Below, one piece after another: positions 9,170 to 64,000 of a DNA stretch of 64,000 nt. The notes beneath the pieces are model-generated. The model had not been told where the DNA came from. It did no database searches and was given only the letters and a program-made list of their open reading frames with translations. Both the position numbers and the translations under genes were made by a program. Source of the DNA: Octopus bimaculoides (Eukaryota). Positions within the stretch are counted from its first letter, which is position 1. Every line of letters starts with the position of its first letter. The stretch is from positions 2,906,879 through 2,970,878 of the forward strand of contig NC_068988.1 in the NCBI RefSeq assembly GCF_001194135.2, read 5' to 3'.

Positions 9170-9322
9170 AAGCACCCACTACAGCTGGCTGCTGTAGAAA
9201 CTTTGCCAGATCAGATTGGAGCCTGGTGCAGCCTTCTGTCTCACCAGCCCTCACTCAAACTGTCCAACTCATGCCAGCATGGAAAGCAGATGTTAAACGA
9301 CGACGATGATGATGATGATGAT
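9170..9322 (+). mobile_element. RTE LINE 3' UTR copy (family A), 5'-truncated
   Basis: GCTGTAGAAACTTTGCCAGATCAGATTGGAGCCTGGTGCAGCC...CATGCCAGCATGGAAAGCAGATGTTAAACGACGACGATGATGAT. Confidence 0.85.
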
Positions 9323-14780: not shown

Positions 14781-14990
14781 CTTTTACTGCTACTTTACTC
14801 TTTTACTTGTTTCAGTCATTTGACTGCGGCCATGCTGGAGCACCGCCTTTAGTCGAGTAAATCGATCCCAGGACTTATTCGATGTAAGCCTAGTATTTAT
14901 GCTATCAGTCTCTTTTGCCAAATCTCTAGGTTACGGGGATGTAAACACACCAGCATCGGTCGTCAAGCCATGTTGGGGGGACAAATACAG

Positions 14991-15035
<45 letters not shown>

Positions 15036-15198
15036 TACGACGGGCTTCTTTCAGTTTCTGTCTACCAAATCTACTCACAAGGCTTTGGTTGGCCCAAGGC
15101 TATAGTAGAAGACACTTGCCCAAGGTGCCACACAGTGTGACTGAACCCTGAACCATGTGGTTGGTAAGCAAGTTACTTACCACACAGCTACTCCTACA
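14781..15198 (-). mobile_element. tRNA-derived SINE family C, near full length
   Basis: Reverse complement: head GTAGCTGTGTGGTAAG...GGTTCAGTCACAC (A/B boxes), central (TA)n/(TG)n, and tail GGTGCTCCAGCATGGCCGCAGTCAAATGACTGAAACAAGTAAAAGAG. Confidence 0.9.
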
Positions 15199-16119
15199 CA
15201 CAAAATTGTTAAAACATTTTGTGTGTTTTAGATGTATAAGTGATTTATTGCCCATATATTCATCAACAAAATCATATATTAACCCAAAGGTGACAAATGG
15301 GCCCCAGTTGAAAACCTTTAGTGTTGATAAGTGATTCAAAATAGCCGAATAGTTAATTTAGTCACATAATGATGGATAGCAACTAGAGCTAGTGAAATTC
15401 ACAAGCCCAGAGAATTGAGACACCCTTATATGGGATTGAACTTAGCTCTGCATGCTAACGTATCAGTTGTTAATATTGTGATTGTATCCTCTTCCATAAA
15501 AAGTGATCATGTGCAAAAGTTAGAAATCAATATTCTTATAATGCAGCTATTCACAATAACAGAATCATTTTGTTTCTATCACGCTGTTGATATTTACAGC
15601 AAGGTAGATGGGACCATTTGAGAATTCAGTGTTTTTACAGCTGCATACAATACAGAAACTAGCCAAATATCACAAGCATTTGCTCTGTAAGCTGGTTGTC
15701 TGATGCTCAGTGAATATGAGTGTATATATTCAAATGTTTACGTTTGTGTATGTGCCTTTGGCTTCATTGTCCCCATTCAAAAGTGGGAGCTGCTTTACCA
15801 GCTTATCCATCACTGCTGTTTATTAACGGCCATTCAGCTAATGAAGAACAAACTCTCCTACATCTGACATACATCAGTCATAAACAACATTGGGAAATTT
15901 GCCAGCAAGCTTTCGCCATGCATATCTGTAGCCAGTTTAGTTTTAAACAGGTTAGTATTAACATATCTAATGCAGGGAGAATGGAATAGATCACATGAAA
16001 CACCATTACGCGATAAGGAAAATGTAAAATGACAAGTCAATGCTAAAAATTATTTTCATCGAATGCTGTGAGTGAGCCATAACCTGATACTGTGGTCTTT
16101 CACTTCGTTGCTGTATAAG

Positions 16120-17910: not shown

Positions 17911-17912
17911 AT

Positions 17913-18172
17913 GCAGAACCGCTAAGTTACGGGGACATCAACACACCAACATTGGTTGTCAAGCGATGGTGTAGTGACAAACACAGACACACACACACAT
18001 ATATGTACGACGGGCTTCTTTCAGTTTCCATCTACCAAATCCACCGCCAAGGCTTTGGTGGGCCCAAGGCTATAGTAGAAGACACTTACTTGCCCAAGGT
18101 GCCAAGCAGTGGGACTGAACCCAGAACCATGTGGATGGGAAGCAAGCTTCTTACCACACAGCCACTCCTGCA
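17913..18172 (-). mobile_element. tRNA-derived SINE family C, 5' two-thirds
   Basis: GACGGGCTTCTTTCAGTTTCC...AAGGCTATAGTAGAAGACACTT...CTTACCACACAGCCACTCCTGCAC, highly similar to 14781-15198. Confidence 0.9.
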
Positions 18173-18187
18173 CATATATATGTTGTG

Positions 18188-24078: not shown

Positions 24079-24910
24079 GATACTTAAATAGATTAATTAT
24101 AGGATTCAATAGAATCTTGGCACATCAATAGGTAGGATGCCAGAAATGGCTTGGTACAATAACATAGGATTCACCGGGAAGTAAAACAACCATGAAGATA
24201 TCGGGTTTTGACAGGGTGCTATAGATATGTAAGTACAAAATCCAATTTAAACCACAGATTTGATTCAGGGATGGTTCTAGTGTGACATAGGTAAAAAAAA
24301 GAACACGAATGAGGTTTAAAATTTGTGACAGCTGTTTCAATAGTATTTTATTGATGTATTCATAGATCACATCATATATAAGATGGAGAGTTTTATGCTA
24401 TGATGTAATATATGAATAAACTGATAAAATTGTACTGAAACAGCTATTATAAGTTTTAAATCCCTCTTGCAGTTCTTTCATAGATATATATACTAGCAGC
24501 TAAACCTGGTTTCATCAGGCCCGTTTAGATGATGTGGCTGTGATCGTTTTCGGTTAGGCATAATCAATAACAGTGTTTCTCAACCTTATCATTTCAGGTC
24601 CCCTGTTTCGATTGGAGCCTTTAGCTGTTTGAAGATTTCATCAACCTCCAGTCACAAAATGGCTTCAGGAGTTGTGAAGAAAGAATTTGTGCGTAATCTG
24701 TTTCTGAGGGCTATTCTATTGGATATATGTATAATCATTAAAACATTTATTTAATTATGAACAAAGAAAGAAATTATACATTAATCCCAATTTTTGTAAG
24801 CAGTTGTATCTGTAAAAATTTTATTTGCAGAGAGCAGAAATTGAAAGATATATGAAATGGACGTGCATGTGTGTGTGTGTGTATGTGAGAGAGAAAGATG
24901 GTGAGAAAGA

Positions 24911-25430
24911 GAAAGTAGCTCATCCTCAGATGTTTCCAGGAAATCCTCAGAATTTTCCAGGAAGACCAATCCTCGGAACTTTCCAGGAATTCCGTGGAAC
25001 TTTCCATGAAGTGCCATCCTCGAAACTGTCCAGGAAGTAGCTCATCCTCAAATGTTTCCGGGAAATCCTCGAAAATTTCCAGGAAGTACCACCATCGGAA
25101 CTTTCCAGGAAGTAGCTTATCCTCGGATATTTCCAGGAAACAAGCGGAACTTTCCAGGAAAGACCATCTTTGGAACTTTCCAGGAAGTAGCTCACCCTCC
25201 GATATTTCAAGGAAATCCTCAGAAGTTTCCAGGAAATATCACCCTCGGAACTTTCCAGGAAGTAGCTCGTCCTTGGATCTTCCCAGGAAATCCTCGGGAC
25301 TTACCAGGAAGTACCATCCTCTGGACTTTCCAGGAAATACCTCATCCTCGGATCTTTCCAGGAAGTACATCATCCTCTGATCTTTCCAGGAAGTCCTCGG
25401 AACTTTCCAGGAAGTCACCCCGGAACTTTC
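24911..25430. repeat. Higher-order minisatellite: 28+21+26 = 75-bp unit built on a TTTCCAGGAA core
   Basis: Parsing at each core gives A B C B C A B C A B C A B C A B C A A B C', with A = GTAGCTCATCCTCGGATN+core, B = ATCCTCGGAAC+core, C = GTACCATCCTCGGAAC+core. Confidence 0.95.
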
Positions 25431-26990: not shown

Positions 26991-27102
26991 GATGATGCTT
27001 ATGACCAAATTCACACACATACACGCATGCATAAACAAACACATTCGTTCTTTCATATATTTTTGCACTGTTCCAGAATTTTGATTATTTACCATGAATT
27101 TT

Positions 27103-27180
27103 CACCAGTCCACAGTCAAATCGTCCAACCCATGCTAGCATGGAAAGCGGACGTTAAACGATGATGATGATGATGATGAT
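27103..27180 (+). mobile_element. Very short RTE 3' end (family A) with (GAT)n tail
   Basis: CAGTCAAATCGTCCAACCCATGCTAGCATGGAAAGCGGACGTTAAACGATGATGAT, near-identical to the reverse complement of 63713-63780. Confidence 0.85.
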
Positions 27181-29024: not shown

Positions 29025-29413
29025 GCACTTGCAAAGACCTGTTGAAGACCAAGTGAAGAGATCGTTATGGGTGAGGACAGTACCACCTGGTTGGAACCCA
29101 TGTAAAAAGCACCATTTGAGCGTGGTTGATGCCAGTGCTGCCTGACTGGCTCCCATGCTGGTGGCACATGAAAAGCACTATTCAAGTGTGGTTGATGCCA
29201 GTACTGCCTGACTGGCCCTCGTACTGGTGGCATGTAAAAAGCACCCACTACCCTCTCGGAGTGGTTGGCATTAGGAAGGGCATCCAGCTGTAGAAACTCT
29301 GCCAGATCAGATTGGAGCCTGGTGCAGCCTCCTGGCTTGCCATCCCTCAGTCAAACTGTCCAATCCATGCCAGGATGGAAAGCGGATGTTAAACGACGAC
29401 AATGATGATGATG
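29025..29413 (+). mobile_element. RTE LINE 3' UTR copy (family A) with two ~65-bp internal repeats
   Basis: CAAAGACCTGTTG start aligns with 53150; two AAAAGCAC...GCCTGACTGGC...TGGTGGCA units; ends GGAAAGCGGATGTTAAACGACGACAATGATGAT. Confidence 0.9.
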
Positions 29414-33697: not shown

Positions 33698-33934
33698 AGC
33701 AGAATCCTTACCATACCAGGAAAAAGTGCCTAGAAGCACTTCGTCCTGCTTTACATCCTGAATTCAAATTCTGACAAGTTTGCTTTTGTCTTTCAGGGCC
33801 AATAAAATAAGTTTCAGTTGAGTTTTGGAGTTGATATATTCGACTTCCCCCTACCCCAGCCCCTGAAATTGCTGGCCTTGTGCCAAAATTTGAAATCATC
33901 ATCATCATCATCATTATTATTGTAATTATTATTA

Positions 33935-33989
<55 letters not shown>

Positions 33990-34023
33990 CATCATCATCA
34001 TCATCAACGTCATCATCAACATT

Positions 34024-34082
<59 letters not shown>

Positions 34083-34123
34083 TATTATTATTATTATCAT
34101 TATTATTATTATTATTATTATTA
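33698..34123 (+). mobile_element. SINE family B copy with long compound (ATC/ATT)n tail
   Basis: AGCAGAATCC...CTGAATTCAAATTCTG...GAAATTGCTGGCCTTGTGCCAAAATTTGAAA then about 225 bp of ATC/ATT repeats. Confidence 0.8.
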
Positions 34124-34637: not shown

Positions 34638-34785
34638 TTGTTTTTTATGAATGAATTTGTTAGATAGAACATGTGTGGATGCACATTTGTGTGTATGTGT
34701 ATATATACACACACATATATATATATATGCACATATACACACATATGTATATATACACACACACATTTATATATCTACACACACA

Positions 34786-35419
34786 AGACACAAGATGTGA
34801 TCTATTTCTAGTGCATTAATTGTCCACGTTAGTGGTCGACGTTATTTTTTAAAATGTACCTTAATCCCCTGAGATTGCAGATAATATTTCTGAATCTCTT
34901 TGATTCTTTAAATGTGCTGGCCCCCTGATAATTAATCGATATTAATTAATATATTAATATATGACTAATTACCAGATCTTATAATAATATTTACCCATTA
35001 CTCATGTTCTCATACTGAATATATTCGACGCAGTAAATATTTTCTGCGGATATATTCCTGGAATTAGCGCGCCAAAACGAAGACTTTTGAATTTTACCAT
35101 TAAGCTGTAATTAGCAGAACCATATGCACGCGCACCCATGGCGGTGGGCAACTATGTATACGATTCTGATAATTGCTGCTACATTACAAATCAGGCTGAT
35201 GAGGAATAGACAAATGGTAAGAATTTGTTAAATCCGAAACCTGGTTCCTGTTTAATAATGATTTTTTTAAGGTGATTTTAAATGTCTTGCCCACTCACGT
35301 ATTTGGTATGCTGCTATATTTCATGTTGAGAACTTTTTAGGTCTTAATAGACACAAGATGTGATCTATTTCTAGCGCATTAATTGTCCATGTTAGTGGTC
35401 GACGTTATTTTTTAAAATG
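34786..35419 (+). mobile_element. 563-bp unit with 71-bp terminal direct repeat containing a hammerhead ribozyme (retrozyme-like / Penelope pLTR-like)
   Basis: 34786-34856 and 35349-35419 are identical except 2 C/T transitions; (CA)n on both flanks; internal hairpins and a hammerhead fold. Confidence 0.7.
35182..35260 (+). ncRNA. Minimal type I hammerhead ribozyme
   Basis: Stem I 35182-35195 with 35247-35260; CUGAUGA 35196-35202; stem II 35203-35215 with 35223-35235 closed by G-C; GAAA 35236-35239; near-palindromic stem III ACCUGGU; predicted cleavage after GUU at 35246. Confidence 0.8.
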
Positions 35420-35461
35420 CACACACACAGATAGATAGATAGTAATATGTTTGTGTTTATA

Positions 35462-48189: not shown

Positions 48190-48583
48190 TACAAGCATTA
48201 TTGTGTGGCAAGAAGTTTGTTTTCCAACCACATGGTCTCAGGTTCAGTCCCACTGCATGGTACCTTGGGCAAGTGTCTTTTACTGTAACCTCGGGTTGAC
48301 CAAAGCCTTGTGAGTAGATTTAGTAGATGGAATCTGAAAGAAGCCTATTGTATATGTATGTGTGTGTGTGTCTTTATGCCTGTGTTTGTCCCCCACCACT
48401 ACCTGACAACCAGTGTTGATGTGTTAACATCCCTGTAACTTAGTGGTTCAGCAAAAAAAAAAAATAACAGAATTGGTATCAGACTTAAAAATAAAATAAG
48501 TACTGGAGTTGATTTGTTTGACTAAAATGTTCCTTAAGGTGGTGCTCCAGCATGGCCACAGTCTAATGACTGAAACAAGCAAA
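48190..48583 (+). mobile_element. SINE family C, full length
   Basis: TGTGTGGCAAGAAG...GGTTCAGTCCCACTGC head, central TG repeat, tail GGTGGTGCTCCAGCATGGCCACAGTCTAATGACTGAAACAAG. Confidence 0.9.
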
Positions 48584-49124
48584 CGATGACAGATATATTT
48601 CATTTGCTGTTGCACATTTAAACATGTAGGAAAAGTAAGATATCTCCTATACAAAATTCTAGAAGAATCTCTAATAGGAGATACACATATTCTACTACTT
48701 GTACAATTCTGTAAATCCTATTAACAAAGGAAACGTGTGTAATGGTAAATAAATAATGCCAACACTTTTTTTCCAGTATCCTGTTTTGATACGTATGTAT
48801 GCATGTATGTATCTATACACACATATATATAGAAACACACAAAAGGACCAATATATTAATTAGACTATCCACTAATCTGCTTGTTTAATTTGTGACTGCA
48901 TTATAAGCAGCTTATCTATAGTATCAGTTAGAGAAGCAAGATGGAAGCATCTGTCATGAGAAGTAGTCAACAAGCTGTGAAACAGTCTTGAAGAAGCTGC
49001 ATCTTTTCTTCCCATACATCAGTGGTATAAAATGGCTGTATTTACATTATTATTTAGCCAACAGTGATGTTTATAATATTTAATTTCCCTTTAGTTCTTC
49101 AGAGACATGCTGTGTTTCATATAA

Positions 49125-50625: not shown

Positions 50626-52816
50626 ATCTGTGTATCACAATTTCCAGATATTGTAATCATTTGTATAAATTCAGGATTTGTGTTTTCTCCTCAAAATCCT
50701 AATCCAAGCCATACTTTCCTCCAGATTGGTCAGTATGTATTTGGTTGTTCTAATAAGAATAATAATAGGTATGAAGTTGAAAGTTTGTGTATGTATGTAT
50801 ACATGCTTACATCTTTCAATGCTTATCGATGAAGGATGTAAACATTATTGAAAAACTATTATTCTTCTATGTCCATAAGTTACAAATACTCTCTTGTCAC
50901 TTTCACTATCAGAAATATTGCAAAACAGTGATTGGTCCATTGGCAATATGTCACCAATGTTACTATTGTCCACAATTTGTGAAGTAAAATAAGTAAATAA
51001 ATAAATAAATAAGTAAATAAATAAATAGCACACAAAATTAAACATACATTGAAGATACCAAATTCATGTAATTATTTGACTTCACTATTTAGAGTGATAA
51101 GTTTAGTTCTGCAGTTAGTGTTTGGAAATAGTTCTTTTAGTTTTGAGCCTAATCTTAACAAAATACTTGAGGAAACATGTATGTGGTTAAATGACTTGCA
51201 AGAAATAACAGATAAAACTCCCTCAAATTACAATTTTTATATCATAATTAAGGCAGAATATAATTGAAAATATAGTTCTAAGTATCCTTAAAAATGGAAG
51301 GATCATTGTTGGAGTGTTTTTGATCATAGTTCTGTTCAATCAGGTCTGACCTGGTGCTAAAACAGCAGCAACTTCATTCAACATGATTTTCAGAAATAAT
51401 GTCTACAAGGTGCTGAAATATTTACCACATAATCATAAAATATAGATTTCAAGCTGATAATGTATTTTGTGTGTGGACAAGATGCACATATTTGCTTGCA
51501 CAAGTTTGTCTCACGGGAAACTGTATTCCATTCTTGTTGAGTGTTGAAGAATGAAAAGGGTGGCTTGATGCAAAAAAAATATACATAAAGCAATGTTACT
51601 CTAAAATTGTTCCTAGAAATCTAACTACTCTACAAAGAAATAAAAATGAACTTATGCCAGTGAAAAACAATCTATTAATACAAAAACATCTGCTGGTAAG
51701 ACAGACAGGCAAGTTATATAGTTAATATTCAAAGCTGATATTTGTATTATTCCAGACTATCTGAATCTGCAAAAACCAAATACTCGCATACAGGTACAAT
51801 CCATTAAAAAAGGAACATCTATGAGACCATTCAACATTTTAGAAATAGCAGCTGATTTTTCTCAAGTCACACCTTTGAAAAATTAAGGAAATATTGCAGA
51901 ATCAAATTAAACACATATAAATATCAGGATAGTTACAATTGGAATGTCTTTAATCATAAATCTGTTTGACCAGGCCAGCCTGGGGCTAAAATAAAAAAAA
52001 TGACCCCAGACAATTAACACCTGTAAATTCGCTTCTATTGAATTACAATATCTGTAGTGAGAAGAGCCTGTAAACTTTCATTATTTGATATTCCATGAAG
52101 CTATTGGAATCGGTTCGTGTACATGTGTCTCTTTCTGTTGCATGCAACATTTTACTGTAGTTCTAATAGACTGAATTAGTCTTATAGCCACCATTGCAGC
52201 TGTCTACAACAGAATGATCTTAAAGAGAGGTAACACCTATCAATGTAGCACACATGTGATGGTCTACTAATATCTCTCTCACAAAACTAAGTTTTTCAGG
52301 ACCAACATTAATTATGCAAAGCTAGATTAACAAACTGAGATAATTTCCTTCAGCAAAGGCAATGGTGCATAATAACAGTTTAATAACAGTGAACATTACT
52401 TAAACTGCATCACAAATTCAACAGTTCCCCTAGTTTAACGAAGTACTAATGTTAAACAAAGAGAAAATAATGAATGTAGATTAGAAATCTATTATTTATT
52501 GGAACTGTCTATTGAAATCAGACATAAATCTAACAGGTCTTTAATATTCTTTAGTCAACAATTACAATAAGGTTTATGTCAGACCCATTTGTGTCTCATT
52601 TTTCTCTTCTACTTAATTGATTTCACTTAAAATGCTTTTTTTCCCCTTTATAATTCCATTCACCCTTTAACTTTCTTTGTCTAGCAGAAGATTTATAAAA
52701 AAAAGACAACGATGGATTTAGAGATTTTGAAATATGTTAATATTTTTTACTTTCTGTTTGTCTGTTGAAGCATTTTTCAGGAATCAAAATACTTATTCTG
52801 CTGTTATATATGTATG

Positions 52817-52862
<46 letters not shown>

Positions 52863-52877
52863 CATATATACACACAT

Positions 52878-53498
52878 ATGAGGACAGATATGTGAAAAAG
52901 TGTTACACCCTAGCAGTTGAGGGAACCTGTGGAAGAGGTAGACCCAAGAAGACCTGGGATGAGGTGGTGAAGCACGACCTTCAAACATTGGACCTCATGG
53001 AGGCAATGATGAGTGACCAAGACCTTTGGAGATAAGCTGTGCTTGAGAGGACCCAGCAAGCCAAGCGAGACCGTAACTGTTGCCTATGCCAGTGCAGCAT
53101 AACCGGCCCATTTAAGAGTACCCTTCAATCACTGGGCAATAAACTGTGCTTGCGAAGACCTGTTGAGTCAAGTGAAGTCATTGTCGTGGCTGATACCAGT
53201 ACAGCCTGACTGGCACCAGTGCTGGTGGCATGTAAAAAGCACCATTCGAGTGTGGCTGATACCAGTGGCACCTGACAGGTACTGTGCTGGTGGCATGTAA
53301 AAAGCACCACTCAAGCATGGTCGATGCTAGTACTGCCTGACTGGCCCTCATGCTGATGGCACAAAAGAAGCACCCACTACACTCTTGGAGTGGTTGGCAT
53401 TAGGAAGAGCATCCAGCTGTAGAAACTTTGCCAGATCAGACTGGAGCCTGGTACAGCTTTCTGGCTTGCCAGCCCTCAGTCAAACCATCCAACCCATC
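52878..53498 (+). mobile_element. RTE LINE 3' fragment: ORF2 C-terminus plus family A 3' UTR with three ~65-bp repeats
   Basis: VKKCYTLAVEGTCGRGRPKKTWDEVVKHDLQTLDLMEAMMSDQDLWR (GRGRP..TW...D...W motif) running into the family A sequence; tail missing. Confidence 0.92.
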
Positions 53499-54919: not shown

Positions 54920-55085
54920 GGCTCAGGAGCTAAAATATACAGCAACAGTAAGAGAAAACAACATCCTCGATGGACTGAACATATAGTCTGAAATAGTTCT
55001 AATAAACCATTTTGATCACTGAGCAGAGGTTGATCGATATTGAAGTGATGCAATCACTAAAACCAATGCAAAAACTGGTTGTATT

Positions 55086-55705
55086 GGTCATCGTCATCGT
55101 CATCGTCATCGTCATCATCATCGTCATCGTCATCGTCATCTTCATCATCATCGTCATCATCATCATCATCGTCATCGTCATCATCATCGTCATCGTCATC
55201 ATCATCGTCATCGTCATGTATTATTTGATGAGAGTGCCCTGATGACACTATAGTGAAAGTCATCCTGATTAAGTCTAAATTCTTCAGCTTCTTTGCCAAC
55301 TCTTGGCCAACCACCTTCTCATATTGTCCATCCATTGTGTTCTTTGTTTGCCTCTTGATCAAATGCCCTCTACTCATCTTTTTGTGATAATGTTTTCCAG
55401 ACCTCTGCTTCCTTGAACATGGCCATAATAGATGAGCTTTTGTTTTTTCACAACGTTCAGGAGTTGTCTTCCATCTGACTTGTTATAACACCAATTTCTT
55501 TGTCTGATTATCCTTACACACCCTCATTTCTAATGCAATGATTATATTCACTTCAAACTTGTTCAGAGTCCATGCTTCACCACCATAAATGCCTACTGGC
55601 CAAAGGAGTGCTTGCGCCACCCTTATTTTAAACATAATTGAGACATTTTTGCTGGGCCACATGTTATTAAGCTTTTCCGCAGACATTCTTGTCATAGCTA
55701 GCAAT
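55086..55705 (-). pseudogene. RTE (BovB-like) LINE 3' fragment with (GAT/GAC)n tail
   Basis: Minus strand: KLNNMW...NVSIMFKIRVAQALLWPVGIYGGEAWTL...LLNVVKKQKLIYYGHV...WMDNM, then GAT/GAC repeats at 55086-55217. Confidence 0.85.
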
Positions 55706-55740
55706 GTCCCATTTTGCTAGCAATCACTAAAAACATGATT

Positions 55741-61895: not shown

Positions 61896-63102
61896 CACAT
61901 TCCTGTATAGTTTTTAACCAGATATACAAGTGGTATAGCAAATCATTTGCATAGCAGCATTGCCAATGTAACTACAATAAGCCTGTTTCTTATTCTTACT
62001 GAGTATTAAGAATGCCTAATGATGATAATGGTTAGCAGAGGCATTTTCTGATTGCACTAGTGGTCTCTGGTTATATTGAATTCCAAATTCATATTTAACT
62101 TTGTTGTTCTATGAATATACACTAGTATATATTATAAGTTTTTCAAACTAAATTTTCGCCTCTTACAATCATTGTTGTGTTAGATGGCCACACAAATACA
62201 TTTTGACAGAAAATATTATGTTCCATATTCTTTTATTTATGTTATAAACAGAATTATTATGATAAAGGATGGTTGATTAGAATTCTTGGCATTATTTAGA
62301 AGTTTAGCTTAATAAAAGTATAGTATTTGTGACTAGTTTTAAAATAATACATATAAATTTATAAAATACAAATTAATTCTTACAATAAATTTAAAGTTAA
62401 TTTTCTTGGAGCCATCTATTAACATTCTTTCCAAATTTCTCTTCAGTTGAGATGATTGTCAACCCATAATCTCAATATTCTTCTAAAAAGCTATATTTGT
62501 TAATGATGCACAAACTTAAGACCTCCTATGCCTTAACTTCAGTGTAGCCAGAAATCTCTAAAGAATGGTTAAACAAAGCATTTAGAGTTTTTTGGTTTAG
62601 AAATTTCTTAGATGAAGAATTATCATCATCATTCAGACTAGCATTCTTATTTTGGTTGCTATAGTTACAACATTTCTAACCATCTAACCATCTTTGGGTA
62701 GCTCTTTTATGAAAACAACTTCCTTGAGGTGCCTGTTATGCCTTCCAACCATTTTCAAGTACCTGTTATATTTTGCAATGTTTTCAGAATTTCTAATTCA
62801 ACCCTAACTTTAATCCATGGCAGTAGATTCTTTACCTTCCATTGTCCATCTCAAGGATATCTTCTATTAGTTTCTTGTGATACCATTTGCTCATTCCAAC
62901 CAAACAAGATTATTGTACTCTTTCCCAAAGATTGAACACTCCACCCAAACCACTACCTTTGACACTCACTTCCTACATTCACCAACACTTAAAGTTTATA
63001 TACACTATCTTATTGCTTGACTTTTCTTTCTTGGACCATATTCTACATCTTAAACTTAATTTCATTCCTTACATTTAAAATTTAGTTGAATTCTTGAATT
63101 AC

Positions 63103-63360
63103 AGGCACTGGTGTGGCTGTGTGGTAAGAAGCTTGCTTCCCAACCAATTGGTTTCAGGTTCAGTCCCGTTTCTTGATACCTTGCACAGGTGTCTTTTACT
63201 ATAGCCTCAGGCTGACCAAAGCCTTGTGAGTGGATTTGGTAAAAAAAAACTGAAAGAAGTTGCAGGTTTTAAGACAATAAAAAGTGGGTTTGATTCATTC
63301 AAGCAGGTGCTCCAGCATGGCCACAATGGAATGACTAAAACAAGTAAAAGATAAAAGATA
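63103..63360 (+). mobile_element. SINE family C with internal deletion
   Basis: Intact head GTGGCTGTGTGGTAAGAAGC...GGTTCAGTCCC and tail GGTGCTCCAGCATGGCCAC...AAACAAGTAAAAGATAAAAGATA, central part missing. Confidence 0.85.
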
Positions 63361-63712: not shown

Positions 63713-64000
63713 ATCATCATCATCATCATCATCGTTTAACGTCCGCTTTCCATGCTAGCATGGGTTGGACGATTTGACTGAGGACTGGTGAAACCGGATG
63801 GCAACACCAGGCTCCAGTCTGATTTGGCAGAGTTTCTACAGCTGGATGCCCTTCCTAACGCCAACCACTCAGAGAGTGTAGTGGGTGCTTTTACGTGTCA
63901 CCCGCATGAAAACGGCCACGCTCGAAATGGTGTCTTTTATGTGCCACCCGCACAAGCCAGTCCAGGGGCGCTGGCAACGATCTCGCTCGAAAATCCTACA
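63713..64000 (-). mobile_element. CpG-retaining (probably young) RTE 3' UTR copy (family A), continuing past the window
   Basis: CATCATCGTTTAACGTCCGCTTTCCATGCTAGCATGGGTTGGACG...CTGGATGCCCTTCCTAACGCCAACCACTCAGAGAGTGTAGTGGGTG. Confidence 0.92.

What the first reader, a model, noticed from the sequence alone, without database searches (positions are those of the whole stretch)
35182..35260. Minimal type I hammerhead ribozyme with a complete catalytic core
Seen in sequence: stem I (CAGG 35192-35195 with CCUG 35247-35250, AAA with UUU across a bulged U, CAUUA with UAAUG), the core CUGAUGA, a 13-position stem II (2 A-A mismatches, 1 G-U) closed by the required G-C pair, GAAA, a near-palindromic stem III ACC-U-GGU, and cleavage triplet GUU at 35244-35246. 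Established knowledge: type I hammerheads with tiny palindromic stem III occur in Penelope-like elements and metazoan retrozymes and typically cleave as dimers. Inference: this is a real or recently decayed ribozyme; U at position 17 is suboptimal and may be a C-to-T change from GUC.
Basis: partly seen in the sequence, partly recalled or inferred. Interest (0 to 1): 0.85.

Follow-up and report, generated by a model that had tools for sequence, protein, structure and literature searches.

The report
Possible hammerhead ribozyme in octopus repeat
A complete hammerhead self-cleaving RNA motif sits inside a small, strongly folded repeat inserted in a microsatellite of an octopus-like genome; it is probably a dead-end copy of a known kind of ribozyme-carrying mobile element, but no relatives could be found to prove it.

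Summary
By chance, a loose match is expected 0.05 times per window. A match this stable is expected 0.0005-0.005 times per window, which is still tens to hundreds per Gb-sized genome.

No Rfam hammerhead model matches, even at E<=10 on 91 nt, and no paralogue could be retrieved, so stem covariation is untested.

The context favours a real element:
- The motif lies in a 489-nt segment bracketed by 74-nt direct repeats at 96-97% identity. This is the only close high-identity direct repeat in the window.
- The repeats make a 1.13-copy, 563-nt unit that sits between (CA)n tracts.
- The unit folds far better than shuffles (z -4.4; 24 control windows reach at best -2.6).
- Around the motif this folding is specific to the + strand.

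The window shares dispersed repeats with Octopus sinensis.

Best reading (about 50%): a monomeric, non-mobile copy of a Penelope-like-element-derived or retrozyme-like element carrying a minimal type I hammerhead. Main rival (about 35%): a chance motif. If real, it is a new member of a known kind. Interest is low to moderate.

The parts
35182..35195 (+). Helix I, 5' strand (CAUUA-C-AAA-U-CAGG)
   Evidence: Sequence. There are 4 contiguous pairs next to the core, extended by 3+5 pairs across a bulge and an internal loop. RNAduplex energy for helix I is -6.4 kcal/mol.
35196..35202 (+). Core box C3-A9, CUGAUGA
   Evidence: Sequence. CTGATGA(N6-36)GAAAC occurs once in the window, against 0.36 expected from shuffles.
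35203..35235 (+). Helix II hairpin: 13 positions (11 pairs, 2 A-A mismatches, 1 G-U), G10.1-C11.1 closure, 7-nt loop GGUAAGA
   Evidence: Pair list. Hairpin energy is -6.3 kcal/mol. It forms in the MFE fold of the 79-mer and of the whole unit.
35236..35239 (+). Core box G12-A15.1, GAAA
   Evidence: Sequence.
35239..35245 (+). Helix III, ACC-U-GGU. The loop is too small to close within one molecule; between two copies it forms 6 pairs around a U-U mismatch.
   Evidence: Sequence. Self-duplex energy is -5.5 kcal/mol. The double-hammerhead fold scores -28.9 kcal/mol, against -29.4 for two monomer MFEs.
35246..35246 (+). Position 17 (U). The predicted scissile bond is between 35246 and 35247; the triplet is GUU.
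   Evidence: Sequence. U is allowed by the NUH rule, but GUC and GUA are described as the two naturally occurring, fastest-cleaving triplets (PMC3138052, read).
35247..35260 (+). Helix I, 3' strand (CCUG-UUU-AA-UAAUG)
   Evidence: Sequence.
34786..34859 (+). Terminal direct repeat R, left copy (74 nt)
   Evidence: the repeat finder family D6, 96% identity; alignment; blastn 97.2% over 71 nt.
34860..35348 (+). Unique body U (489 nt) carrying the hammerhead. It begins and ends with CTTAAT. R+U makes a 563-nt unit with 33.7% GC.
   Evidence: No second copy in the window. As a circular RNA its MFE is -133.1 kcal/mol, z -4.4, against 24 control windows with mean z -0.43 and minimum -2.59. The domain 35000-35340 has z -4.07 on the + strand and -1.79 on the reverse complement.
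35349..35422 (+). Terminal direct repeat R, right copy (74 nt; 3 transition differences from the left copy)
34680..34785 (.). Left flank: (TG/TA/CA)n microsatellite ending ...ACACACACA at the element boundary
35423..35445 (.). Right flank: ACACACA followed by (GATA)n. Together with the left flank this reads as an insertion into a (CA)n tract, or a CA-type target duplication.

Best explanation
The motif is the hammerhead ribozyme of a small non-autonomous retroelement, of the kind called animal non-LTR retrozymes or Penelope-like-element (PLE) derivatives, in an octopod genome. This locus holds about 1.13 copies of a 563-nt unit (R-U-R, 34786-35422) inserted into a (CA)n microsatellite. In an active master copy with two or more tandem units, two hammerheads would pair through their near-palindromic ACCUGGU segments to form a double hammerhead. 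Each would then cut after U17, releasing a unit-length RNA with a 5'-OH and a 2',3'-cyclic phosphate. A tRNA-type ligase would circularise that RNA, and a PLE-type reverse transcriptase would copy it for more than one turn, which explains the 74-nt terminal redundancy. This particular copy has only one ribozyme, so it cannot release a unit-length RNA and is a dead-end insertion. It has probably drifted since insertion: the two R copies differ by about 4%, so roughly 1-2 substitutions are expected within the 79-nt motif, and these could account for U17 or the A-A mismatches. What is shown: the motif, the terminal repeats, the microsatellite flanks, the strong folding and the octopod origin. What is inferred: homology to PLE or retrozyme hammerheads, the dimer mechanism, circular RNA, reverse transcription, and the decay.
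For: The core and all three helices are complete. Chance expectation for an equally stable motif is 5e-4 to 5e-3 per window. The motif lies inside the only direct-repeat pair in the 64-kb window that is >=90% identical and within 5 kb; the bracketed 489 nt make up 0.8% of the window. Both flanks of R-U-R are (CA)n; PLEs show an insertion bias for microsatellites and form partial-tandem pseudo-LTRs (PMC8557442). The 563-nt unit length and 34% GC fall within published retrozyme ranges (51-972 bp; GC <45%), and monomeric copies are common (bioRxiv 10.64898/2026.07.22.740005; PMC7229834). The unit is unusually structured (z -4.4, against a control minimum of -2.59), and the hammerhead domain folds much better on the + strand (z -4.07) than on its reverse complement (z -1.79). 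The double-hammerhead fold is energetically on a par with two monomer MFE folds (-28.9 against -29.4 kcal/mol). The architecture matches the PLE minimal hammerheads: helix I of 4-5 bp, enlarged helix II, G10.1-C11.1, and a small palindromic helix III (PMC4209133). The window shares 28 dispersed-repeat matches at 77-89% identity with an Octopus sinensis locus. Cephalopod genomes carry Penelope elements, and the giant squid genome has 235 Rfam hammerhead-1 loci (PMC6962438).
Against: No Rfam hammerhead model matches at the gathering score or at E<=10, even on the 91-nt region alone. No paralogue was found in the window, in 22 kb of O. sinensis sequence, in 5.8 billion predicted proteins searched with all translated frames of the unit, or in metagenome contigs, so there is no covariation evidence and no proof that the unit is a repeat family. 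There is one hammerhead, not a tandem pair. No RT or GIY-YIG coding remnant lies on the + strand within about 2.4 kb. Next to the core, helix II has only 3 contiguous pairs before an A-A mismatch and helix I only 4, compared with 4 and 6 in validated retrozyme ribozymes. [quoted passage not shown] U17 is unusual among natural hammerheads. Helix III is an odd-length near-palindrome with a U-U mismatch, whereas the validated examples have perfect even-length palindromes. In the MFE fold, CAGG pairs with the other CCUG (35240-35243), which gives an inactive conformation. Validated retrozymes have z-scores of only -0.9 to -3.2, so strong folding is not diagnostic. A genome of this size should hold tens to hundreds of equally good chance motifs.
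Confidence: 0.5

Rival explanations
1. Chance motif. The hammerhead consensus arose by coincidence in AT-rich, hairpin-rich non-coding DNA, and the 74-nt direct repeats reflect an unrelated local duplication or assembly quirk. Nothing is cleaved.
For: The motif carries little information. A loose descriptor hits 0.048 times per window, and about 20-200 equally stable motifs are expected per 2.7-Gb genome. No Rfam hammerhead hit at any threshold. No paralogue was found. The helices next to the core are weaker than in validated ribozymes, position 17 is U, and the MFE fold is inactive. A region already rich in local helices supplies stems I and II almost for free. The context argument was made after the fact.
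Against: Joint coincidence is required. The expectation for an equally good motif (5e-4 to 5e-3 per window) must be multiplied by the chance of landing in the 0.8% of the window bracketed by its only close high-identity direct repeat. That repeat structure also has the unit size, GC content, microsatellite flanks and + strand-biased folding expected of a hammerhead-bearing element. G10.1-C11.1 and the near-palindromic helix III were not required by my descriptor yet are present.
Confidence: 0.35
2. Remnant of the pseudo-LTR of an autonomous Penelope-like element whose reverse-transcriptase and endonuclease gene has been deleted or lies outside the region examined. The ribozyme once processed the PLE transcript.
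For: PLE hammerheads lie in pseudo-LTRs, most genomic copies are solitary truncated motifs, and PLEs insert in microsatellites (PMC4209133; PMC8557442). Cephalopods carry Penelope elements.
Against: Pfam finds no RT or GIY-YIG domain in the three + strand frames of 32.8-37.6 kb; only a mariner HTH_48 domain is found. The R-U-R unit has sharp borders against microsatellite sequence on both sides and is only 637 nt long. The repeated part (R) does not contain the ribozyme, whereas PLE pseudo-LTRs do.
Confidence: 0.08
3. A structured element of another kind, such as a foldback or MITE-like DNA element, a satellite monomer, or a hairpin-derived small-RNA locus, in which the hammerhead-like junction is incidental.
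For: The folding is very strong (z -4.4). AT-rich palindromes at 34925-34975 and a hairpin at 35017-35057 fold on both strands. Validated retrozymes are less structured than this unit.
Against: There are no terminal inverted repeats around the unit. The termini are direct repeats, not inverted ones. The domain holding the motif is structured mainly on the + strand. No Rfam family matches within the unit itself; the sub-threshold microRNA-type matches all centre on the flanking TA/CA microsatellite. There are no tRNA-like parts.
Confidence: 0.05

Closest known systems
Minimal type I hammerheads of metazoan Penelope-like elements (Cervera & de la Pena 2014, PMC4209133)
   Same: Type I topology; complete CUGAUGA / GAAA / UH core; G10.1-C11.1; short helix I (4 contiguous bp) with an ill-defined distal part; enlarged helix II; a very small near-palindromic helix III that implies action as a dimer; occurrence as a solitary motif; microsatellite-associated insertion with a partial-tandem terminal repeat.
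   Different: [quoted passage not shown] Helix II is longer (13 positions against 6-8 bp) and contains two A-A mismatches. The terminal repeat does not contain the ribozyme. No RT-EN ORF is nearby. No consensus family could be shown in the same genome.
Animal non-LTR retrozymes (Cervera & de la Pena 2020, PMC7229834; Li et al. 2026 preprint)
   Same: AT-rich non-coding unit a few hundred nt long carrying one type I hammerhead; more-than-unit-length copy; the unit size of 563 nt lies inside the reported 51-972 bp range; monomeric derivatives are common; the RNA is predicted to be highly base-paired.
   Different: Retrozyme hammerheads are canonical (helix I 6 bp, helix II 4 bp, conserved loop-loop contacts, even-length perfectly palindromic helix III, GUC or GUA). 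This one has none of those features. Only 1.13 units are present and they carry one ribozyme. Expression as circular RNA is unknown.
Rfam Hammerhead_1 (RF00163) loci reported in cephalopods (235 in Architeuthis dux, PMC6962438)
   Same: Same host group (cephalopods) and the same ribozyme class and topology.
   Different: The candidate scores below E=10 against every Rfam hammerhead model, so it is not one of the loci such annotation would find.

Membership tests
Hammerhead ribozyme (class-level definition) | Conserved core: C3 U4 G5 A6 N7 G8 A9, G12 A13 A14, an A15.1-U16.1 pair, and H17 (not G) | tested here: met
   CUGAUGA 35196-35202; GAAA 35236-35239; A35239 can pair with U35245; U35246 is position 17.
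Hammerhead ribozyme (class-level definition) | Three helices radiating from the core, with a G10.1-C11.1 closing pair | tested here: met
   Helix I has 4+3+5 pairs and helix II has 11 pairs in 13 positions with G-C closure. Helix III has 3 pairs, but with a 1-nt loop it can form only between two copies.
Hammerhead ribozyme (class-level definition) | Site-specific self-cleavage 3' of position 17 | not testable with these tools
   Needs in vitro transcription of monomer and dimer constructs. Only thermodynamic plausibility of the double-hammerhead fold was computed.
Rfam hammerhead families (Hammerhead_1 RF00163, Hammerhead_3, Hammerhead_II, HH9, HH10) | Covariance-model score at or above the family's gathering threshold | tested here: not met
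   No hit at gathering on the whole window. No hammerhead family appears at E<=10 on 451 nt or on 91 nt. This may be explained by the 33-nt helix II, which is my inference and was not tested.
PLE minimal hammerhead (Cervera & de la Pena 2014) | Enlarged helix II and short helix I (4-5 bp) | tested here: met
   Helix II spans 13 positions; helix I has 4 contiguous pairs followed by a bulge.
PLE minimal hammerhead (Cervera & de la Pena 2014) | [quoted passage not shown] | tested here: not met
   A35202 is followed directly by G35203, which pairs with C35235. Shifting the register by one base breaks the next pair (sequence).
PLE minimal hammerhead (Cervera & de la Pena 2014) | Palindromic 15.2-16.2 and loop 3 | tested here: inconclusive
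   ACCUGGU is a 7-nt near-palindrome. Two copies give 6 pairs around a central U-U mismatch (-5.5 kcal/mol).
PLE minimal hammerhead (Cervera & de la Pena 2014) | Located in the pseudo-LTR of an element encoding RT and a GIY-YIG endonuclease | tested here: not met
   No RT or GIY-YIG Pfam match in the + strand frames of 32.8-37.6 kb. The motif lies in the unique part, not in the repeated 74-mer. Published surveys note that most PLE hammerheads are solitary, so this does not exclude PLE ancestry.
PLE minimal hammerhead (Cervera & de la Pena 2014) | Belongs to a consensus family in the same genome with covariation in the stems | not testable with these tools
   The source genome is not in any searchable DNA collection. 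Indirect routes found nothing.
Animal non-LTR retrozyme | Head-to-tail tandem of at least two units, each with a hammerhead | tested here: not met
   Only 1.13 units (R-U-R) and one hammerhead. At best this is a 'monomer derivative' as described in the 2026 preprint.
Animal non-LTR retrozyme | Unit of about 50-1000 bp, non-coding, with low GC (<45%) | tested here: met
   563 nt and 33.7% GC. The longest open stretch is 49 codons. The translated frames have no protein homologues.
Animal non-LTR retrozyme | Canonical type I ribozyme: helix I 6 bp, helix II 4 bp, with loop 1-loop 2 contacts | tested here: not met
   The candidate has 4 and 3 contiguous pairs next to the core, against 6 and 4 in the coral, mussel and axolotl controls.
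Animal non-LTR retrozyme | Expressed as unit-length linear and circular RNA | not testable with these tools
   No transcriptome data are accessible. The unit is predicted to be highly structured as a circle, but that is not diagnostic.

The most novel reading that the evidence does not exclude
Octopods harbour a previously undescribed retrozyme-like family of about 560-nt units whose type I hammerhead has an unusually long helix II interrupted by an internal loop. That internal loop may replace loop 2 in contacting the helix I bulge. The variant escapes all Rfam hammerhead models and would give rise to circular RNAs. The locus here would be one monomeric copy of that family.
Probability: 0.25. 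Interest if true: 0.4.

Novelty: new member of a known kind. Interest (0 to 1): 0.25.

Why it matters
If real, this adds cephalopods to the animals in which hammerhead-bearing, PLE-related non-autonomous elements can be tied to a defined unit. It would also show a helix II architecture that current covariance models miss, so such ribozymes would be undercounted in genome annotation. It would not change the understanding of the ribozyme or of retrozymes. If it is a chance motif, it shows how easily the low-information hammerhead consensus arises in AT-rich, hairpin-rich animal DNA.

Tried and rejected
1. Rfam covariance models. I ran the gathering threshold on the whole window and E<=10 on 451 nt, 91 nt and 1001 nt. 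No hammerhead family appeared. The only weak matches were snoRNA, CRISPR-repeat and microRNA-type hits, and the microRNA-type ones are all driven by the TA/CA microsatellite.
2. Paralogues in the window. Sensitive blastn of U against the 64 kb found none. Relaxed descriptors allowing a bulge after A9, the U3-A8 core variant and a 1-bp helix III gave only unrelated, poor hits.
3. Paralogues through predicted proteins. I concatenated all 16 open stretches of at least 24 codons from the six frames of the unit and searched 5.8 billion proteins. There were 3993 word-sharing candidates and none scored E<=10. This is a weak negative, because such short non-coding ORFs are rarely called as genes.
4. 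Exact-pattern scans of metagenome contigs with a degenerate hammerhead pattern and with the core of R. Both returned nothing, as expected for animal DNA.
5. A sample of Octopus sinensis sequence (22 kb around a GVQW3/mariner-like gene). It shares many dispersed repeats with the window but nothing from the unit. Sampling more loci was judged too unlikely to hit a family of unknown copy number.
6. A search for PLE coding remnants on the + strand around the motif found only a mariner HTH_48 domain. A first attempt using DNA references failed because of stop codons. The - strand and the rest of the window were not scanned against Pfam.
7. tRNA or SINE-head search and a bacterial promoter/terminator scan gave nothing relevant.
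8. Supplements of the PLE papers are not held as text, so no mollusc or cephalopod hammerhead sequences were available for direct comparison. The NAR 2020 supplement supplied four validated retrozymes, which I used as controls.
9. An alternative register with UUC as the cleavage triplet was rejected because it breaks helices I and III (sequence).
10. A first attempt to score a double hammerhead with intramolecular helix I was topologically wrong. It was corrected to the nested intermolecular arrangement.

Full report
**1. What the window is.**
The 64 kb has 33% GC, is full of microsatellites, contains 1173 N from assembly gaps, and has no long ORFs other than low-complexity ones. A 157-codon ORF at 35612-36085 carries a weak Mos1-type HTH_48 domain. 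Its best named relative is Octopus sinensis 'protein GVQW3', at 59% identity. A 22-kb O. sinensis locus fetched through that protein shares 28 dispersed-repeat matches with the window at 77-89% identity. The window therefore comes from an octopod or closely related cephalopod draft genome. Cephalopod genomes are reported to contain Penelope elements, and the giant squid genome has 235 Rfam hammerhead-1 loci (PMC6962438).

**2. The observation.**
- Helix I: CAGG/CCUG, AAA/UUU across bulged U35191, and CAUUA/UAAUG.
- Core box CUGAUGA at 35196-35202.
- Helix II: 13 positions with 11 standard pairs, two A-A mismatches and one G-U, closed by G35203-C35235.
- GAAA at 35236-35239.
- ACC-U-GGU at 35239-35245.
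- GUU at 35244-35246.

A descriptor I wrote independently finds this and nothing else on either strand. It also recovers three of four experimentally validated retrozyme hammerheads from the supplement of PMC7229834; the fourth has a known U-U mismatch at the base of helix II.

**3. Is the motif more than chance?**
In 750 Mb of second-order Markov sequence with the window's composition, the loose descriptor hits 280 times, or 0.048 per window counting both strands. Of those hits, 31 have summed helix energies as good as the candidate, and 3 match or beat it in all three helices. That gives 5e-4 to 5e-3 per window. It also means tens to hundreds of equally good accidental motifs in a 2.7-Gb genome. 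The motif alone cannot settle the question.

**4. Covariance models.**
No Rfam hammerhead family matches at the gathering score. None matches at E<=10 on 451 nt, or even on the 91-nt region alone. It shows the motif is not a canonical type I hammerhead of the sort annotated in cephalopods. My inference, which I did not test, is that the 33-nt helix II is heavily penalised, since canonical hammerheads have about 14 nt there. Published PLE minimal hammerheads were likewise found only with relaxed descriptors (PMC4209133).

**5. Context.**
The motif lies in a 489-nt unique segment, U (34860-35348). U is bracketed by two 74-nt direct repeats, R, at 34786-34859 and 35349-35422. The repeats are 96-97% identical and differ by three transitions.
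- A self-comparison of the whole window shows this is the only direct-repeat pair that is >=90% identical and less than 5 kb apart. Other nearby pairs are 77-88% identical members of dispersed families or minisatellites.
- The outer flanks are microsatellite on both sides, ending ...ACACACACA on the left and starting ACACACA(GATA)n on the right. R-U-R therefore reads as 1.13 copies of a 563-nt unit inserted into a (CA)n tract.
- PLEs are described as forming partial-tandem pseudo-LTRs and favouring microsatellite targets (PMC8557442).
- Animal non-LTR retrozymes, now argued to be PLE derivatives, have consensus lengths of 51-972 bp and low GC, and often occur as monomers.
- No RT or GIY-YIG remnant lies on the + strand between 32.8 and 37.6 kb, so the element would be non-autonomous.
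- About 4% divergence between the R copies implies roughly 1-2 substitutions in the 79-nt motif since insertion. This is my inference, and it would allow U17 or the helix II mismatches to be decay.

**6. RNA structure.**
- Folded as a circle, the 563-nt unit has an MFE of -133.1 kcal/mol, z -4.4 against dinucleotide shuffles. Twenty-four control windows of the same length from the same 64 kb have mean z -0.43, SD 1.3 and minimum -2.59.
- The 341-nt domain containing the motif (35000-35340) has z -4.07 on the + strand but -1.79 on its reverse complement. This suggests an RNA-level, G-U-dependent structure on the ribozyme strand. The left part of the unit folds on both strands because of AT-rich palindromes.
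- Four validated retrozymes give z of only -0.9 to -3.2. Strong folding is therefore compatible with a retrozyme-like RNA but not diagnostic of one.
- In the MFE folds, CAGG pairs with the first CCUG (35240-35243) rather than with the helix I partner, so the ground state is inactive.
- A correctly nested double-hammerhead fold of two copies scores -28.9 kcal/mol. Two monomer MFE folds give -29.4, and the unconstrained dimer MFE is -33.4. The dimeric active fold is therefore accessible.

**7. Search for relatives.**
- No second copy in the window.
- None in the O. sinensis sample.
- No match for any translated frame of the unit among 5.8 billion predicted proteins.
- None in metagenome contigs.

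The source genome is not in any DNA collection available here. The decisive covariation test could not be run.

**8. Comparison with known systems.**
The anatomy is closest to the PLE minimal hammerheads: short helix I, enlarged helix II, G10.1-C11.1, and a tiny palindromic helix III implying dimeric action.
- It lacks their typical unpaired base after A9.
- Its helix II is even longer and mismatch-interrupted.
- It does not sit in the repeated terminal segment.

It is not a canonical retrozyme hammerhead. Validated examples have helix I of 6 bp, helix II of 4 bp, an even perfect palindrome in helix III, and GUC or GUA. GUU is allowed by the NUH rule, but a review describes GUC and GUA as the two naturally occurring, fastest-cleaving triplets (PMC3138052).

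**9. Verdict.**
- About 0.5: this is the hammerhead of a PLE-derived or retrozyme-like non-autonomous element, present as a dead-end 1.13-mer and possibly decayed.
- About 0.35: a chance motif next to an unrelated duplication.
- About 0.08: a pseudo-LTR remnant of an autonomous PLE.
- About 0.05: another kind of structured element.

If real, it is a new member of a known kind, with a helix II variant that current models miss. Interest is low to moderate.

Noticed in passing
35531-36821 (ORF 35612-36085, +): Decayed mariner/Mos1-like DNA transposon about 100 nt downstream of the R-U-R unit. It has 26-nt TIR-like inverted arms at 35531-35556 and 36796-36821, 1239 nt apart. The N-terminal transposase fragment has a weak HTH_48 match and its best named relative is O. 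sinensis GVQW3 (59% identity). The ORF breaks off where a dispersed repeat starts (36132-36275).
   Followed up: partly
34860-34865 and 35343-35348: The unique segment U begins and ends with the same hexamer, CTTAAT, so in an ideal tandem the 74-nt R would be flanked by CTTAAT on both sides. This could be a junction microhomology or an old target duplication around R. It is unexplained.
   Followed up: no
35192-35195 with 35240-35243 or 35247-35250: CAGG can pair with either of two CCUG copies (CCUGGUUCCUG). The MFE uses the first, which buries the cleavage site; the hammerhead fold needs the second. This may be a conformational switch, or just an argument against activity.
   Followed up: partly
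14798-15199, 17912-18181, 48202-48595, 63102-63259 and others: A dispersed SINE-like repeat family that is also present several times in the unrelated O. sinensis locus L001 at 77-89% identity. This was the main evidence for the octopod origin of the window.
   Followed up: partly
36132-36275 vs 38358-38500; 9191-9317 vs 29287-29413: A second dispersed repeat family (78-91% identity between copies). Its translations repeatedly read ...AVETLPDQIGAW...NPCQ...LNDDDD, and it often ends in an Asp-codon/(GAT)n-like tract.
   Followed up: no
38176-38366 and 53186-53309: A 66-nt-period minisatellite (about 3 copies, 75-88% identity) that appears to be attached to the dispersed repeat family above.
   Followed up: no
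24910-25415: A tandem array with a period of about 75 nt (77-88% identity). It produces overlapping open frames on both strands with reiterated FPGN/SRK peptides. No Pfam match was found for one of these frames.
   Followed up: partly
27100-27180 and 63713-63793: An 81-nt inverted pair at 98.8% identity, 36.5 kb apart. This is the most similar repeat pair in the window. Its nature is unknown.
   Followed up: no
52769-53032 (+) and 55060-55716 (-): Open stretches whose translations look like the C-terminal parts of LINE reverse-transcriptase ORF2 proteins (for example ...GRGRPKKTWDEVVKHDL...DLWR and ...LLWPVGIYGGEAWTL...). This judgement comes from reading the translations only; they were not scanned against Pfam.
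   Followed up: no
33895-34123; N runs near 2.1-2.2 kb, 5.7-5.9 kb, 39.9-40.5 kb, 57.6-58.1 kb: A very long (ATC/ATT)n microsatellite (about 230 nt). Four assembly gaps, each embedded in TA/CA microsatellite, show that this is a short-read-type draft in which repeat structures should be checked against long reads.
   Followed up: no
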